Source of the DNA: Fimbriosthenelais zetlandica
Lineage: Eukaryota
Direction: 5' to 3'
Assembly: GCA_977030845.1 (NCBI GenBank)
Contig: OZ365110.1
Span: 17,732,001 to 17,796,000 of the forward strand
DNA: 64,000 nucleotides
Part shown: positions 48,190 to 55,200 of the stretch, piece by piece
Layout of the letters: each line of letters opens with the position of its first letter
Numbering within the stretch: position 1 is the first letter of the stretch
Made by a program: the position numbers and the translations under genes
The notes under the pieces: model-generated
What the model saw: the letters and a program-made list of their open reading frames with translations, nothing else
Databases searched by the model: none
What the model was told of the DNA's origin: nothing

Positions 48190-51100
48190 ATGAAATTTAA
48201 GACAATTTTGGAAGGACGACAGGCTGTAATTTTCAATCACCTCGGTGAAGGAAGATTAGTTGAAGGACCAGCTAGGGTAGGAAAATAGTTTTCGTTGCAT
48301 ACCTATATTATGTAATTTCCCGTAATCAACTCTATAACAGGGCCCAGGGCATGTGATTACTATTGACCATTGTTTCCAATATATTGCCTGCAGGTTTTTC
48401 TCTTTCGGGAAAGATTACAGGAATTACAACACTACACTGCCACAGCTCATCAGTACCTGCGAATTAAAGATACCCAGGGATATGTCACTCACAGACAAGG
48501 GTAAATATATCAGTCAGTCCCAATCTATTTTGTGATTAAAATGAACTTAAACCCAGTAACTCATTAACCTCATCCAATGCCAATTCTATCTTTCATGAAT
48601 TTGTATTTTTCAGGCCGTGTGAAATGTTTTTCAACCCATTGGAGCATTGGAGTGTCGCTGTCTTGGCAGCCAATGTTATAGATGCCAACCATGTAATAGT
48701 GGTGTACAAAAAGTTGAAGGATAATAGTGTTCAGAGGAGGATAGTTTCAGGGCCAACAATATTCATGCCTCAGGCAGAGGAATGGTATAAGATAGTTTTC
48801 TGTAGTATTACAAAAAAAAATATATCCTACAAAGTATGCCAAGTATAACATTCTCCACGATAATTTCTATTTTTCCTACAGGTTACATGAATTTAAGTGG
48901 CATGGACAAGATCCAAACGAAATTGGACGCATGATTCCAAACAAGGACCAATTTACCAAAATGCTAATAATTCCCAGTCGTTTTTACTATAACGTAGGTA
49001 TACTTTTTAGGCACATAATATTATGATTTAGCTGTCAATAATTTTGAGTTGATTTTCTATAATTTCCCATAATTATCCACTTACACATAACGTGTATTCA
49101 TTTCATGAAATCTTTGTTTTATTTTTTTACAGGTGAGAGATGTGAGGACCACAGATGATACAATGCTGTCTGTGAAGCTCTTGATATTTCATGAATTTGT
49201 GGACGTCTTGAAAATGGTTAATATGGTTAACTTGAAATAATTATTTACCATGTCTTCGAATGCCGTTGTATTTACCAATTATCATGTACATGTACCGCAT
49301 TGAACTGTTCTCTAATATGTCTCTTGTTCCTGTTACAGTTAGAAAATACCCATGACCCCATCGCAGACATGATTAAGTAAGTAATGAAATGAGTAATGAA
49401 CATGAATTTTAATTATTTTAACCCTTAAGTAGCACTTACGATTGGCAAGAGAAAGGCCTGAATACATTAGATAGATACATTATTATGATCGGTATGTTTC
49501 GCTTCCCGATTTCCAGTGCCCTATGTGCAGACGTGATTGCTTTTGCTGGTAAACAAAAGTAAGTGTCCCTTTTGCCTTATTAGTAAATATTCCCAGCGGT
49601 CAAATGTCATTAGTTATAGTGCCGATTCTCACAATTTGCATTTGTAGGCTGAGTGAGTTTCTACAGAACACACCAACACTGAACAACTTAAAGATGTACA
49701 CTCACCTCGTACAACGAGCAGAAAATGTTGGTATTCACATCTCTAAAGTGGTCTATCGAGGTTACCATGCAGATGAAAAGCTACAGGTAAAGCATACTTC
49801 GGTTTCTTTATCGTAAAGCAGGCCTGTAAGGCTTGTAAGCCATGCCTGTAAAGCAGGCCTGTAAGGCTTGTAAGCCATGCCTGTAAAGCAGGCCTGTAAG
49901 CCATGCCTGTAAAGCAGGCCTGTAAGCCATGCCTCTAAAGCAGGCCTGACAGCCATGCCTCTAAAGCAGGCCTGACAGCCATGCCTCTAAAGCAGGCCTG
50001 ACAGCCATGCCTCTAAAGCAGGCCTGTCAGCCATACTTGCCTGTCATAATGTCTGCCTGTCAGCCATGCCTGTAAAGCAGGCCTGTAAGCCATGCCTGTA
50101 AAGCAGGCCTGTAAGCCATGCCTCTAAAGCAGGCCTGTCAGCCATGCCTCTAAAGCAGGCCTGTCAGCCATGCTTGCCTGTCATAATGTCTGCCTGTCAG
50201 CCATGCCTGTAAAGCAGGCCTGTAAGCCATAATGACTGATATATTTACCCTTGTTTGTGAGTGACATATGCCTGGGTGTCTTTAATTACTATGGTACTGA
50301 TGAGCTATGGCAGTGTAGTATTATCAGCCTTGCCTATACGCCAGTCCTTTATCATAGCATGTGCTCATTTTCCCTTTTTTGTTCTGTATCAAATTGCTTG
50401 TAACAGTCATCATGTGAAGTAAAACATGTTATTGCAGAAAATGCAGGACCATACTATTGAATCTCGTACACGCATGCGCCTAGAAGGCGAACTTCAAGAA
50501 CAGGAGCAAAGGCTGAAGGACTTTAAGCTCAAAATGGAACAAGACCGACTCAAGCTTGGTATATATATAGCCTATATCCGATATACACATATCAGAACTG
50601 AAGATCTATTTTCCCACAAAGTTTTGCAAATTAATTGATCAACGTCCATATGATTATGACTCAGCTGGGGCCTGTTTCCCGAAGAGAATGTGCGAATCAA
50701 TCATTGACCCAAATTGTCATATTTACCGTTAAAGTTAAGAAATATATCGGATTGTTGTAAATATAAATTTACAGAACAAGAGATGGAACAGTGTAAGTTG
50801 GAGCATTTGCAAAAAACGGAAGCAATGAACAAGGCTCACGATTTGCAGACAAAGCGTCTCCTTCATGAAGCCAATGTTGAGCAAACAAGTATGGAAGGGA
50901 AGCTTAACCTGGGTAAGCTTTGAGTTCATAATAGTTTTGGGATAATATTATACGCCTATATCTATAATAATCCTGACATAATAGTGTACCCCAGTGTACA
51001 GTAAAACATACAATGTTGCTTTTGCAAACTTTTTTAATATTATTTTCAGACATGGATAGGTTGTCTAAAGAAGAGAAGCTAAAACACTACAACGACCTCA

Positions 51101-51201
51101 AAGACCTGAACGTCAATTTGACACAACACTTGATTCAGGAGCAAAATCCTCCCGTTCACCAAGAATTCAGGGTTGTTCAAGGCAGCGACACTTACTATTG
51201 A
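48190..51201 (+). CDS. Major-vault-protein-related short protein (3 MVP-type repeats + SPFH/shoulder domain + coiled coil), 396 aa
   Basis: 11 phase-consistent GT-AG exons: 48190-48276, 48394-48500, 48614-48784, 48882-48993, 49133-49216, 49339-49376, 49517-49558, 49648-49786, 50438-50558, 50775-50912, 51050-51201 (TGA); AATAAA at 51261. Repeats RLVEGPARVFL / THRQGPCEMFF / RRIVSGPTIFMPQAEE. Shoulder-like VRDVRTTDDTMLSVKLLIFHEF...DPIADMINALCADVIAFAG...GIHISKVVYRG. E/Q/K-rich helix. The gene model is solid; the family call is by recalled alignment. Confidence 0.85.
49813..50230. repeat. ~26-bp minisatellite (AAAGCAGGCCTGTMAGCCATGCCTST) with a duplicated higher-order block, in intron 8 of the MVP-like gene
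   Basis: About 14-15 copies. The interruption gcctgtcataatgtctgcctgtcagccatg occurs twice (~50039 and ~50175). Confidence 0.92.
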
Positions 51202-51677
51202 TATGTAAAAAATGTCTCATTTGTGGCTCTTATTATATTATGAATGTGACACTTATTTTTAATAAAGACACTCACCTACACCATATAAGATATCCTGTTT
51301 ATTTTTAGTTCAAGTGCCAATTTCAAAAGATATGAATCCTGGGGACAACACCTGGTGACCCTTTACTTTAATACATTTTTTTTCTTCGGAAAAATAATGC
51401 ATGGATGCATGAACAAATGTTGAATATTTTTCTGTAAAATTATTCCAATTAATCTATCTGCTTACAATTAAATGCCTTTTTGTAAGTTGTTTTAGACTAA
51501 GTAAATTAGACCAGGATTGAAAATATCCATCGAAGCGAAGGAAATTATACCCTAACTGGATTGTGAATTCATTTATACCTGTAAGATAATGTTAAGTAGG
51601 GACACGATACACTTGACCCTCCCTGAACACATGTGATGTAATCTGAAAATACTCATGTGGGTGTTGTCCCAGCTTAG

Positions 51678-52221: not shown

Positions 52222-55200
52222 ATGTTGTCACGCAGCTTAAGCTTATCCCGGATTGCATCCCATCGTGGGGCAATGCAGGCATTCAGCACAAAAGCAGCCA
52301 AAGCCTTGATTGGTAACGACTCTGAGAAAATATTTCAAAGGGAAAGCAAATATGGCGCGCATAACTACCACCCTCTACCTGTGGCACTCTGCAGAGGAAA
52401 AGGTTAACACATTTCCTATATACCGTCTTCCAATAAATATTATGGTAAATTTGGTATGACAATTAAGTCTTTGATGTGGTTAATTAGTCAATCATTATGG
52501 TGAATCTATAATGGGCAGTGCATGGTTGTGGAAGTATTTTGGTGTACATGTCCTGAAATTGGGCGAGATTCATATGATGCGGCAATGGAAATAAAATGAT
52601 GATAAATATGGATTAATGTCACTTAATATCATTTCAGGTGTCTTTGTGTGGGATGTGGAAGGAAACAAGTACTTTGATTTCCTCAGTGCCTATTCAGCTG
52701 TGAACCAGGGTCATTGTCATCCCCGCATCGTGCAGGCATTGCAAGAACAGGCAGAAACCATTACCTTAACCTCCCGGGCCTTCTACAACACAGTACTTGG
52801 AGAGTTCGAGGAATACATCACAGAGCTTTTTGGATATGATAAAATTCTCCCCATGAACACAGGTACTACCTTGCCTTAATATCATTGGAAGGGCATGAAG
52901 GTTATAAATCTTCACGTTTTTTTTAAGAAAAAATGAAATATGTAAGGTATTCTGAAGGGTCCTGGATTATCTTATCAGTCTTTAATCATTGTGCGATACT
53001 CTCGCACAAAGATATTTCAGAGTGAGATAAGAATACTTCCGTGAATAGACCCGGATATTAAATGATATTATATATATCATGTAGGACTTCATCGGGGGCC
53101 TGACTCATAAAAAACACATACTTTTATATTACAAAGGCTCCTGATCATTCATTCGATATTATGGATAACCACATCGATACAAAAATACAATACAACATTT
53201 ACTTGGTTTCTGTGCATGATGGTCATGACCAAATCATCACTGTTACTGATGACTGACCATCCTTACAGGTCCATTGATTTGAAAGTCATGAGAACTTAAC
53301 TGCCCTCTTCTAACTGCCCTCATCATATGACTTTGAAACAAAATGCATTGAGCTTGAATAAGCATGTGCTAACAGAATATGATTTCATACGTTTTTTAGG
53401 TGTTGAGGGTGGCGAGACAGCTACAAAAATGGCTAGAAAATGGGGATACAATGTGAAGAACATCCCTGAAAATCAGGCTCGGCATGTCTTTGCTTCTGGA
53501 AACTTCTGGGGAAGAACAATCGCAGCCATTTCAAGTTCGTCAGATCCAGACACCTACTCTGGATTTGGACCCTTCATGCCTGGCTACATATCCGTACCTT
53601 ATAATGATCTGGAGGCATTAGATGTAAGTGGTCTTAATGGATCTTTTTAATGAATTCCCAACCAAAGAATTAGCGGTATATGGTAGTTCCGATGGGGTGT
53701 ATAGCTAGCTATATGTTGTCTGTTTCTTTTAGGAAGTTACCAAAGATCCCCGCGTGTGTTCCTTCATGGTGGAGCCCATACAAGGCGAGGCTGGTGTAGT
53801 TGTACCTCATGATGGTTATCTGAGGGGTGTCCGTGAAATATGTACAAAAAATAATGTCCTCTTCATCGCTGATGAGGTACAGACAGGACTAGCAAGGACT
53901 GGCAGGTGAGACATCCTCTTCTACAGCCATTAACATTTTTATCCCCATGAAACTCATTTCAGGAAAGTTAAGTTTAGTTATTATGGAGATTTCTCGTATA
54001 TTTGTTTTGAGACTGTCTTTAGAAGATCAACCTCTCTCGTCTTTTGGTTCCAGTCTCTCTAGGTCTTTTAGCCAGTACTTTTCCATTATATTTTCCATTG
54101 CATTTTGTCAGTAATTCTTATCATGATTTATGCTATCTAAAAGGTATTGAGGTCAAGAATGCATGAGCATAGGTATTTGTAGGAACCTTATCGAAAATGA
54201 TTTTTCGAGATACATGTAATATATAATTAAATAACCCTCCGTGGTTTACTTTGTTTATTACTTACTTTCAAAATATCATTTAATAGGAGGCTGTGCGTGG
54301 ATCATGAAGAAGTTAGGCCCGATATTGTTATACTAGGGAAAGCTTTGTCTGGAGGGGTCTATCCGGTAAGGAAATTTGACCAACTATACTTAATCAAAGA
54401 TATAATGATGGAATATGATATTAATGTGATTTATAAACATCAAATTAAGACAATAATAAGCCAGGTTTTCTACCACTGGAGTAACTGCAGTGTATTGGAA
54501 ATCCCATGGATTGCCCATGCAGTCATATCAATAATCTATATATTTAATATCTATATAATAATTTAATATAACATTAAATTGTCCAGTAGAGATTTATATA
54601 ATATTATATACATCTAACAATGATGATTTTGAGGTGGGAAGAAGTAATGCAAACCAACATTTATATATTGTTCAACTAGGTGAGTGGGGTACTGTGTAAT
54701 GATGACATTATGCTGCTGATAAGACCAGGTGAACATGGTTCTACTTATGGTGGCAACCCACTGGGAGCTAGAGTAGCAATAGAAGCGCTTAAGGTAGGTT
54801 CTCAAATATTCATATATTTTTTAGAATTCAATGATTGAATGGTACAATATTGCCTGCAGCTATCTGAAAAGACATCGTCCATGCCTTAAAGTACTCATTT
54901 TCAAGGAGCTTGAGGGCTACAGACACATTTACACGTTTCTCATTTCTTATTTAAACAGGTCATAGAAGAGGAGAATTTGGCACAAAATGCCGAGAGACTA
55001 GGTCATCTGCTACGTTCAGAACTTGGTCAGCTGCCAAAGGAAGTGGTCTCAGTCGTAAGAGGAAAAGGATTATTGAACGCTATTGTTATCAGTCCTGGTA
55101 AGATATTATATATTGACTGAAACCACTTGTCTTTATCACATCAATGTATAATAATGGTGAAACTCATGCTGATAACCCTTTCAACTTGCAGAGTTTGATG

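What the first reader, a model, noticed from the sequence alone, without database searches (positions are those of the whole stretch)
48190..51201. 'Mini-vault' candidate: 396-aa protein with the MVP repeat-shoulder-cap architecture but only three repeats
Seen: three beta-rich repeats each centred on GP (RLVEGPARV, HRQGPCEM, RRIVSGPTIFMPQAEE), then IPSRFYYNVRDVRTTDDTMLSVKLLIFHEF...THDPIADMINALCADVIAFAGKQKLSEFLQN...GIHISKVVYRG, then ~110 aa of coiled coil. No TM segment or signal peptide. Known: human MVP has 9 repeats, an SPFH-like shoulder and a long cap helix. Its last repeat and shoulder read RARVVFGPELVSLGPEE...[29 protein letters not shown]...[31 protein letters not shown]...GLVVSSVDVQ, which is colinear with this sequence; canonical MVP is ~850-900 aa. 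Inference: a structural intermediate between flotillin/stomatin cages and vaults that could assemble a shorter barrel or a membrane-associated cage, i.e. an uncharacterised particle. Whether the family is already described could not be checked.
Basis: partly seen in the sequence, partly recalled or inferred. Interest (0 to 1): 0.8.

Follow-up and report, generated by a model that had tools for sequence, protein, structure and literature searches.

The report
Three-repeat vault-like SPFH cage protein
A real, conserved animal gene encodes a 396-residue protein built like the top part of a vault-shell subunit (three vault repeats, shoulder, long cap helix), and its bacterial cousins sit in operons that recycle NAD and remove ADP-ribose, which gives a new, testable lead on what vaults are for.

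Summary
An 11-exon GT-AG gene at 48190-51201 (+) encodes a 396-aa protein with no membrane segment. It aligns end to end with about 400-aa orthologues.

The fold was modelled on an orthologue 56% identical to the window protein, because the spliced protein could not be submitted. It has 15 beta strands (three five-stranded repeats), an SPFH domain and a helix of about 109 residues. In the PDB it matches major vault protein (MVP) best, over repeats R7-R9, shoulder and cap helix. The N-terminal repeats alone match only MVP.

By sequence it is not an MVP. Pfam gives Band_7, not MVP_shoulder. The genome also has two canonical MVP genes and a second paralogue of this gene.

The family is old and uncharacterised. 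It has two animal paralogue clades from sponges upward, plus protists and many bacteria. Relatives carry extra repeat units and reach 809 aa.

In 43 of 46 bacterial loci without an N-terminal extension, the gene lies in a tight operon of NAD-salvage and ADP-ribose-processing genes. MVP binds NAD+/ADP-ribose at the R9/shoulder junction, and that junction is this family's most conserved block.

My best reading is a soluble ring- or cup-forming protein that binds ADP-ribose/NAD. Neither assembly nor ligand binding is shown.

The parts
48190..48276 (+). Exon 1 (aa 1-29): start codon and most of vault-type repeat 1 (contains G26-P27)
   Evidence: family profile hit 1-30
48394..48500 (+). Exon 2 (aa 30-65): end of repeat 1 and first half of repeat 2
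48614..48784 (+). Exon 3 (aa 65-122): repeat 2 (G65-P66) and repeat 3 (G111-P112). This is the 56-aa piece used to find the family
48882..48993 (+). Exon 4 (aa 122-159): invariant junction block W-x-H-x-F-x-W-H-G...D-P...R...P and the start of the SPFH domain. By colinearity it is the counterpart of MVP's nucleotide 'keyhole loop'
   Evidence: PMC12280208
49133..49216 (+). Exon 5 (aa 160-187): SPFH beta strands with invariant V-R-T-x-D-D and K174
49339..49376 (+). Exon 6 (aa 188-200): SPFH helix 1 (T-H-D-P-I-A-D)
49517..49558 (+). Exon 7 (aa 200-214): SPFH helix
49648..49786 (+). Exon 8 (aa 214-260): end of the SPFH domain (G-x-x-x-x-K-V-V-Y-R-G-Y) and start of the long helix
50438..50558 (+). 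Exon 9 (aa 261-301): cap-helix-like long helix
50775..50912 (+). Exon 10 (aa 301-347): long helix, continued
51050..51201 (+). Exon 11 (aa 347-396 plus stop): end of the helix, a conserved short C-terminal helix and a low-confidence tail
51261..51266 (+). AATAAA polyadenylation signal, 60 nt after the stop
   Evidence: read in the sequence

Best explanation
This is an intact, conserved protein-coding gene for a soluble member of the SPFH superfamily. Its architecture is that of the C-terminal part of a major vault protein: three five-stranded vault-type beta repeats (equivalent to MVP R7-R9), an SPFH 'shoulder' domain, a cap-helix-like helix of about 110 residues and a short conserved C-terminal element. 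This part is shown.

It belongs to an ancient, uncharacterised family. The family has two animal paralogue clades, protist members and many bacterial members, mostly Planctomycetota and Verrucomicrobiota. Relatives with 1-4 extra copies of a two-repeat unit reach 809 aa. This part is also shown.

The following is inferred. Like MVP and every structurally solved SPFH protein, it assembles side by side through the SPFH domain and the long helix into a closed ring or cup with a short three-repeat wall, possibly as a hetero-oligomer of the two paralogues. It binds ADP-ribose or NAD+ in a pocket at the last-repeat/SPFH junction between neighbouring subunits, as MVP does. It thereby buffers or compartmentalises ADP-ribose/NAD turnover.
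For: Gene and conservation.

Fold: the orthologue model has pLDDT 86.6. The N-terminal model has pLDDT 93.1.

Whole model against the PDB: the top 12 Foldseek hits are all MVP (E 7e-16 to 9e-11), against 8e-8 or weaker for stomatin, erlin, flotillin and HflK/C. VIA-align gives Z 16.4 for model 1-387 against MVP 321-780. Other SPFH proteins reach Z 12.5 or less, and the full-length SPFH chains align only from about residue 84.

Repeats alone: the 16 best PDB hits are all MVP, including the R1-R7 crystal structures. TM-scores normalised to the query are 0.49-0.65, and probability then drops below 0.2. Among 48,161 representative chains only MVP reaches Z 5 or more (Z 8.3 with 135/138 residues aligned; Z 6.8).

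Profile-profile: the repeat profile against bacterial MVP gives 94.5% probability, E 7e-8.

Repeat-number series. One 809-aa member hits Vault_3 at 2e-11. Atlas clusters carry Band_7, MVP_shoulder and Vault_3 together.

NAD/ADP-ribose link: 43 of 46 bacterial loci without an N-terminal extension, from 7 phyla, carry NrtR, PncA-like, PncB, NadE, Nudix, ADP-ribosylglycohydrolase, PARG or Tpt1 genes on the same strand. 31 loci have three or more of these. The median gap to the flanking gene is 12.5 bp.

MVP binds NAD+/ADP/ADP-ribose between adjacent subunits, using the loop at the end of R9 plus the first shoulder residues (PMC12280208; bioRxiv 10.64898/2026.05.01.722283). The family's most conserved block is at that same junction. 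A restricted profile alignment places W-H-G-x-D-P-x-N-K opposite the bacterial-MVP loop S-T-G-T-P-K.
Against: No sequence-level membership in MVP. Neither Pfam MVP_shoulder nor the Vault repeat model hits the window gene. The family profile does not hit the genome's own MVP genes or any PDB sequence.

The full-length profile-profile match to bacterial MVP is only 78.7% and is in a doubtful register. The junction alignment is weak (E 1.5e-3, probability 16%).

Assembly is untested. The dimer prediction gave no answer.

Ligand binding rests on bacterial gene context plus analogy. Eukaryotic genes have no operon context. In the window protein the loop lysine, conserved in 35/44 members, is isoleucine.

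A second bacterial subgroup has an N-terminal extension, identified as an MshEN domain in 3 of the 4 members scanned. It shows no NAD gene context, with one exception in 24 loci.

The structure was modelled on an orthologue 56% identical to the window protein, not on the window protein itself.
Confidence: 0.6

Rival explanations
1. It is an ordinary membrane-associated SPFH/band-7 scaffold, stomatin- or flotillin-like. It forms a cage on a membrane and organises membrane proteins. The N-terminal beta region is just an elaborated SPFH1 subdomain, and the vault resemblance has no functional meaning.
For: Pfam Band_7 is the only family over its cut-off (26 of 44 members). The SPFH core superposes on stomatin at 1.8 A over 109 residues. 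Single repeat units resemble the N-terminal beta units of flotillin, stomatin, prohibitin and erlin at Z 3-4. Vaults themselves have recently been seen on membranes (PMC13100048).
Against: There is no TM segment, hairpin or N-terminal lipidation motif. The three-repeat region as a whole matches only MVP. The bacterial context is cytosolic NAD/ADP-ribose enzymes, not NfeD, FtsH or membrane partners.
Confidence: 0.2
2. It is a vault-like oligomeric shell or scaffold whose role is unrelated to nucleotides, for example enclosing or tethering protein or RNA cargo. The bacterial operon reflects co-regulation only, for example a stress regulon under NrtR.
For: The fold evidence is the same as for the main explanation. 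The bacterial subgroup with an N-terminal extension (MshEN in 3 of 4 members scanned) lacks NAD context. Some members carry a Biotin_lipoyl domain. The pocket alignment is weak.
Against: The tight gene order (median gap 12.5 bp) persists in 7 phyla. The most conserved residues lie at the junction that forms MVP's nucleotide pocket.
Confidence: 0.15
3. It is a non-assembling monomeric or dimeric protein. It only shares domains with MVP and acts as a soluble adaptor or regulator.
For: No assembly evidence was obtained (one search gave no answer, so it counts neither way).
Against: Every SPFH-domain-plus-long-helix protein among the structural matches is solved as a large ring or cage: MVP, stomatin, flotillin, HflK/C, prohibitin, erlin and QmcA. 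A solvent-exposed single helix of about 109 residues is unlikely to be stable alone (inference).
Confidence: 0.05

Closest known systems
Major vault protein (MVP; Pfam Vault/Vault_2-4 repeats plus MVP_shoulder; about 850-900 aa; 78-mer vault shell)
   Same: The domain order is the same as MVP residues about 321-780: vault-type five-stranded repeats, an SPFH-type shoulder and a very long cap helix. There is no membrane anchor. The repeat motif is recognisable at profile level. The conserved block lies where MVP binds NAD+/ADP-ribose.
   Different: It has three repeats instead of nine and 396 aa instead of about 860. No Pfam MVP_shoulder or Vault hit. The shoulder is a canonical Band_7-type SPFH domain. 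The C-terminal element is short rather than the MVP cap-ring. It coexists with two canonical MVP genes in the same genome, so it is a separate family, not a truncated MVP.
Membrane SPFH/band-7 cage proteins (stomatin, flotillin 1/2, prohibitin 1/2, erlin 1/2, HflK/C, QmcA)
   Same: SPFH domain (Pfam Band_7 in 26/44 members; Z 11-12.5) followed by a long helix. Animals have paired paralogues, as with flotillin, prohibitin and erlin.
   Different: There is no TM segment, hairpin or lipid anchor. There are two extra vault-type repeats N-terminal to the part that aligns with these proteins: the full-length chains align only from about residue 84. The bacterial neighbours are NAD/ADP-ribose enzymes, not NfeD or FtsH.
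Previously reported short MVP homologues: Naegleria gruberi 530-559-aa MVP-like proteins (PMC3595041) and the five-repeat Asgard archaeal MVP (PMC12962969)
   Same: They are MVP-like proteins with fewer repeats, a shoulder and a cap helix, proposed to form smaller cups.
   Different: Those were identified as MVP homologues: the Naegleria proteins by a Pfam MVP-shoulder annotation, the Asgard protein by a reciprocal best structural hit to Xenopus MVP and phylogeny. This family has only three repeats, is Band_7-type, occurs alongside canonical MVP in animals, and has the bacterial NAD/ADP-ribose operon context. I did not compare sequences with them directly.
Bacterial full-length MVP homologues (Myxococcota and others, about 950 aa; bioRxiv 10.1101/872010)
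   Same: They are bacterial proteins with vault repeats, shoulder and coiled coil. One Myxococcota genome carries both kinds.
   Different: Those hit Vault_3 and MVP_shoulder and are more than twice as long. The profile-profile link to this family is partial.

Membership tests
Major vault protein (MVP) | N-terminal tandem repeats with the vault-repeat fold (five-stranded antiparallel beta units) | tested here: met
   The N-terminal model (pLDDT 93.1, 15 strands) matches only MVP in the PDB, by Foldseek and by VIA-align wide search (Z 8.3 and 6.8; next best 4.2). Tested on orthologue P0112, not on the window protein itself.
Major vault protein (MVP) | Sequence match to Pfam vault repeat models (PF01505, PF17794-6) above cut-off | tested here: not met
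   PF01505 hits only the two canonical MVP loci of the genome. 3 of 44 family members give faint Vault_3 hits (best E 0.016). hhalign of the repeat profile against bacterial MVP gives 94.5% probability.
Major vault protein (MVP) | MVP_shoulder domain (PF11978) | tested here: not met
   No hit at the window gene at E up to 10. 0 of 44 members hit it.
Major vault protein (MVP) | Nine repeats, about 850-900 aa | tested here: not met
   396 aa, three repeats.
Major vault protein (MVP) | Long cap helix directly after the shoulder | tested here: met
   Single helix 257-365 in the model, aligned to the MVP cap helix up to residue 780.
Major vault protein (MVP) | Self-assembly into a closed barrel or cup | tested here: inconclusive
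   The two-copy prediction returned 'no answer'. Rings of many copies cannot be tested with these tools.
Major vault protein (MVP) | NAD+/ADP-ribose pocket at the R9/shoulder junction between subunits (PMC12280208) | tested here: inconclusive
   The family's conserved block is at the equivalent junction. A weak restricted alignment puts its loop opposite the MVP loop. No residue-level superposition or binding test was possible.
SPFH / Band 7 superfamily (PF01145) | Pfam Band_7 above the gathering score | tested here: met
   26 of 44 family members match at E up to 0.1, best E 3.3e-9. P0026 scores 30.7 bits against a cut-off of 23.6. The window protein could only be scanned exon by exon, and the exons are too short to hit.
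SPFH / Band 7 superfamily (PF01145) | SPFH alpha/beta fold | tested here: met
   Mouse stomatin SPFH domain: Z 12.5, rmsd 1.8 A over 109 of 109 residues.
SPFH / Band 7 superfamily (PF01145) | Membrane attachment (N-terminal TM, hairpin or lipidation), typical of stomatin, prohibitin, HflK/C, erlin and flotillin | tested here: not met
   Maximum hydropathy 1.57, within a beta strand. The N-terminus is MKFKT, with no Gly2 and no N-terminal Cys.

The most novel reading that the evidence does not exclude
This family is a 'mini-vault': a soluble cage of three-repeat subunits, conserved from Planctomycetota and Verrucomicrobiota to animals, that binds ADP-ribose/NAD+ at the repeat/shoulder junction. 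The eukaryotic vault would then be an elongated derivative of such a cage. The recently found NAD+/ADP-ribose pocket, the TEP1 NADase and PARP4 would reflect an ancestral role of vault-type shells in NAD/ADP-ribose homeostasis.
Probability: 0.3. Interest if true: 0.9.

Novelty: new variant of a known kind. Interest (0 to 1): 0.78.

Why it matters
The function of vaults has been open since 1986. In 2025-2026 MVP was found to hold NAD+/ADP-ribose in a pocket at the R9/shoulder junction, and TEP1 was shown to be an NADase.

This family keeps just that part of the MVP architecture. It is small (about 400 aa) and exists in cultivable bacteria, for example Adhaeretor mobilis and Poriferisphaera sp. 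WC338. There it sits in an operon with NrtR, PncA, PncB, NadE, Nudix, ARH, PARG and Tpt1.

That makes it a tractable system for asking whether vault-type shells evolved around ADP-ribose/NAD handling. It could also serve as a minimal scaffold for cage engineering.

It also shows a protein family in many marine invertebrates, with two old paralogues, that databases label only 'Band 7 domain-containing' or 'uncharacterized'. Some members are mislabelled 'T2SS protein E N-terminal domain' or 'POU domain protein'.

Tried and rejected
1. Single exons against Pfam and PDB sequences gave nothing meaningful, because the pieces are too short.
2. tblastn of the spliced protein against the genome's MVP-shoulder loci found no significant similarity.
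3. The family profile against PDB sequences found nothing. Neither MVP nor any SPFH protein was hit.
4. Full-length hhalign of the family against bacterial MVP gave 78.7%, in the helical part, in a register that conflicts with colinearity. I do not rely on it.
5. Complex prediction with two copies plus ADP-ribose returned 'no answer'. It is not evidence either way.
6. No public sequencing run, RNA or DNA, was listed for the stretch, so splicing could not be checked with reads.
7. NCBIfam and PADLOC have no family for the bacterial or animal proteins.
8. The contigs of the multi-repeat relatives P0017 and P0028 carry only genes without annotation, which is uninformative.
9. TEP1_N (PF05386) gave no hit in the genome. 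This is a weak 29-position model.
10. Rfam found nothing in the window, so no vault RNA.
11. The literature held here contains no paper describing this family or the operon. de Souza & Aravind 2012 on NAD-utilising gene neighbourhoods is not held.
12. The 396-aa spliced protein has no reference and was not pasted into any tool. Searches and folds used exon references or orthologues.
13. Recent horizontal transfer or contamination as the origin of the animal gene is rejected. The gene has 10 introns, and the tree separates bacteria (one clan, SH-aLRT 99) from two animal clades that follow animal phylogeny.
Full report
**1. The gene**

The region is eukaryotic, with about 38% GC and short exons. 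Joining 11 exons at canonical GT-AG sites gives a 1191-nt CDS and a 396-aa protein. AATAAA lies at 51261-51266.

The spliced protein aligns 1-396 to 1-396 with many proteins of about 400 aa, at 46-56% identity. It aligns at 75% with P0152. P0152 is encoded without interruption on a 1.5-kb Logan contig, which is transcript-like.

The window protein keeps 26/26 invariant and 39/41 near-invariant residues of a 44-sequence family alignment. There is no TM segment or signal peptide.

**2. A constraint on the methods**

The spliced protein has no reference, so it could not be submitted to the search and fold tools. I used the in-frame exon 3 (56 aa) for the exhaustive phmmer search. After that I worked with orthologues that have ids: alignment A1, first row P0112, which is 56% identical to the window protein. 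The structural statements therefore apply to the family and, by conservation, to the window protein.

**3. Fold**

The AlphaFold2 model of P0112 has pLDDT 86.6. Strands span residues 2-131, an alpha/beta domain spans 139-255, there is one helix at 257-365, then a short helix and a disordered tail.

- Foldseek against the PDB: the 12 best hits are all MVP (E 7e-16 to 9e-11, whole-length alignments). Next come stomatin, erlin, flotillin, HflK/C and prohibitin, from 8e-8.
- VIA-align: MVP scores Z 16.4, with model 1-387 aligned to MVP 321-780. By the published domain limits these are R7-R9, shoulder and cap helix. Other SPFH proteins reach Z 12.5 or less, and the full-length chains align only from about residue 84. 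The SPFH core superposes on mouse stomatin at 1.8 A over 109 residues.
- The N-terminal 138 residues folded alone (pLDDT 93.1, 15 strands, which is three five-stranded units) match only MVP. The 16 best Foldseek hits include the R1-R7 crystal structures, which have no shoulder. TM-scores normalised to the query are 0.49-0.65, and probability then falls below 0.2.
- In the Foldseek-independent search of 48,161 representative chains, only MVP reaches Z 5 or more: Z 8.3 with 135/138 residues aligned, and Z 6.8. Everything else is at 4.2 or below and mostly covers a single unit.

**4. Sequence-level relation to MVP**

The window gene is not hit by Pfam MVP_shoulder or by the Vault repeat model. 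Both models find two canonical MVP genes elsewhere in the genome, at C11 about 42.05 Mb and C10 about 56.07 Mb.

In the family, 26/44 members match Band_7, 3/44 faintly match Vault_3 and none match MVP_shoulder. The family profile finds no PDB sequence. In the genome it finds only the window gene and one paralogue.

The repeat profile aligns to the repeat motif of bacterial MVP homologues at 94.5% probability, E 7e-8. One 809-aa relative hits Vault_3 at 2e-11. Atlas clusters near the family carry Band_7, MVP_shoulder and Vault_3 together.

So this is a separate family that bridges classical SPFH proteins and MVP. It is not an MVP in the Pfam sense.

**5. Family and distribution**

Homologues of about 400 aa occur in molluscs, nemerteans, an annelid, crinoids, hemichordates, sponges and protists. 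They are named only 'uncharacterized' or 'Band 7 domain-containing'.

A tree of 71 sequences puts all 36 sampled bacterial proteins in one clan (SH-aLRT 99). Animals fall in two paralogue clades, each running from sponges to bilaterians. The window gene groups with P0152 and then with the annelid Owenia. The second paralogue is at C21:27796408-27800801. This argues for vertical inheritance in animals.

A family HMM shows that longer relatives contain 1-4 extra copies of a two-repeat unit of about 85 aa (profile positions about 37-123), placed before the same SPFH domain and helix. Their lengths are 491, 610-629, 665-691 and 809 aa, and one is from the protist Pygsuia. The wall length of this architecture is therefore evolutionarily variable.

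**6. Bacterial context, the main new lead**

A scan of one genome per prokaryotic species found 161 loci, of which 80 were kept. They show 37-47% identity over the full length and are mostly Planctomycetota and Verrucomicrobiota.

The neighbours were clustered and identified with Pfam. A recurrent same-strand order is PncB - NadE - NrtR - ADP-ribosylglycohydrolase - PncA-like isochorismatase - (PARG - ARH) - this gene - Nudix - (Tpt1/KptA).

Of 46 loci whose protein has no N-terminal extension, 43 have at least one of these genes within 8 kb and 31 have three or more. They come from 7 phyla. The median gap to the flanking NAD/ADP-ribose gene is 12.5 bp.

A second subgroup of 24 loci, including Gemmataceae and Myxococcota members, has an N-terminal extension. 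It is an MshEN domain in 3 of the 4 members scanned. This subgroup lacks the NAD context, with one exception. The MshEN domain probably explains the 'T2SS protein E N-terminal domain' names given to some mollusc paralogues.

**7. Link to what is known about vaults**

MVP binds NAD+, ADP and ADP-ribose in a basic pocket between adjacent subunits. The pocket is formed by the 'keyhole loop' at the end of R9 (R504, K506, R507, P508, H509, R511), by R437, and by L517, D521, F522, W545, P565 and K573 (PMC12280208). TEP1 is an NADase, and native brain vaults contain ADP-ribose (bioRxiv 10.64898/2026.05.01.722283).

The mini family retains exactly the R7-R9 plus shoulder region. Its most conserved block, E-W-x-H-x-F-x-W-H-G ... 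D-P ... K-x-R ... P ... F-Y-Y-N-V ... V-R-T-x-D-D, lies at the last-repeat/SPFH junction.

It places W-H-G-x-D-P-x-N-K opposite the bacterial-MVP loop S-T-G-T-P-K, but weakly (E 1.5e-3). Equating that loop with the human keyhole loop rests on my recollection of the human sequence, so it is an inference. The window protein has Ile at the loop Lys position.

**8. Mechanism proposed**

Shown: the fold, the family, the repeat-number series and the operon.

Inferred: lateral assembly into a ring or cup, as in MVP and all solved SPFH cages, and ADP-ribose/NAD+ binding at the inter-subunit junction. The role would be to buffer or compartmentalise ADP-ribose/NAD turnover.

Assembly could not be tested (one search gave no answer). 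No reads were available to check expression.

**9. Novelty**

MVP-like proteins with fewer repeats have been reported: Naegleria (PMC3595041) and a five-repeat Asgard MVP (PMC12962969). Bacterial full-length MVPs are also known (10.1101/872010).

I found no description of this three-repeat Band_7-type family, of its coexistence with canonical MVP in animals, or of its NAD/ADP-ribose operon. Curated bacterial libraries have no model for it. I class it as a new variant of a known kind.

Noticed in passing
L042:1969-9761, L078:83-11209, L067:2139-11028 (bacterial loci): Conserved operon PncB-NadE-NrtR-ARH-PncA-(PARG-ARH)-vault-like gene-Nudix-(Tpt1/KptA) in Planctomycetota, Verrucomicrobiota and five other phyla. 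Tpt1/KptA and PARG have no established role in these bacteria.
   Followed up: partly
L071:7356-9185, L084:7044-9230, L088:7362-9221: A bacterial subgroup, including Gemmataceae such as Limnoglobus, fuses an N-terminal MshEN domain (known as a c-di-GMP-binding module) to the three-repeat vault-like module. It has no NAD gene neighbours.
   Followed up: partly
P0008, P0010, P0019, P0025, P0028, P0017 (proteins): Relatives with 1-4 extra copies of a two-repeat unit (491 to 809 aa) show a graded series of wall lengths. P0019 is from the breviate Pygsuia. The contigs of P0017 and P0028 carry only unannotated ORFs and could be viral or protist.
   Followed up: partly
G000:C21:27796408-27800801 (+) (L017/L018): Second paralogue of the window gene. 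It is of the 'paralogue 2' type (59-72% identical per exon to Lineus paralogue 2), and its exon boundaries appear similar.
   Followed up: partly
G000:C11:42047800-42051700 (-) and G000:C10:56066700-56072000 (-): The genome has two canonical MVP genes with Vault repeats and MVP_shoulder. A 1260-aa open frame with a DUF4062 (TEP1-type NADase) domain lies at C37:18487978, and a second DUF4062 hit lies at C10:2621879.
   Followed up: partly
model mcdcdd5f462c9 residues 1-39 and 40-84: Single vault-type repeat units superpose at Z 3-4, rmsd 1.4-2.9 A, on the N-terminal beta units of flotillin, stomatin, prohibitin, erlin and HflK. This hints that vault repeats arose by duplication of that SPFH subdomain.
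   Followed up: no
ESM Atlas clusters: Several clusters of 333-871-aa proteins with MVP_shoulder and Vault_3 are labelled mostly Uroviricota. This suggests tailed-phage contigs encode MVP-like proteins.
   Followed up: no
window 49800-50240 (intron 8): Tandem array of a unit of about 22-45 bp (gcctgtaaagcaggcctgtaagccat and variants) fills most of intron 8. It creates the short minus-strand ORFs listed there.
   Followed up: no
P0082:115-182, P0061:56-109: Some family members carry an N-terminal Biotin_lipoyl domain in front of the vault-like module.
   Followed up: no
window 52222-52407 (+): The first exon of the next gene downstream resembles, from memory, the N-terminus of mitochondrial ornithine aminotransferase. 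Pfam gave no hit on this 61-aa piece.
   Followed up: partly
G001:C216 (L100:1903-4803): One Myxococcota MAG encodes both a 966-aa MVP homologue (Vault_3 plus MVP_shoulder) and a member of the short family with an N-terminal extension (L093).
   Followed up: partly
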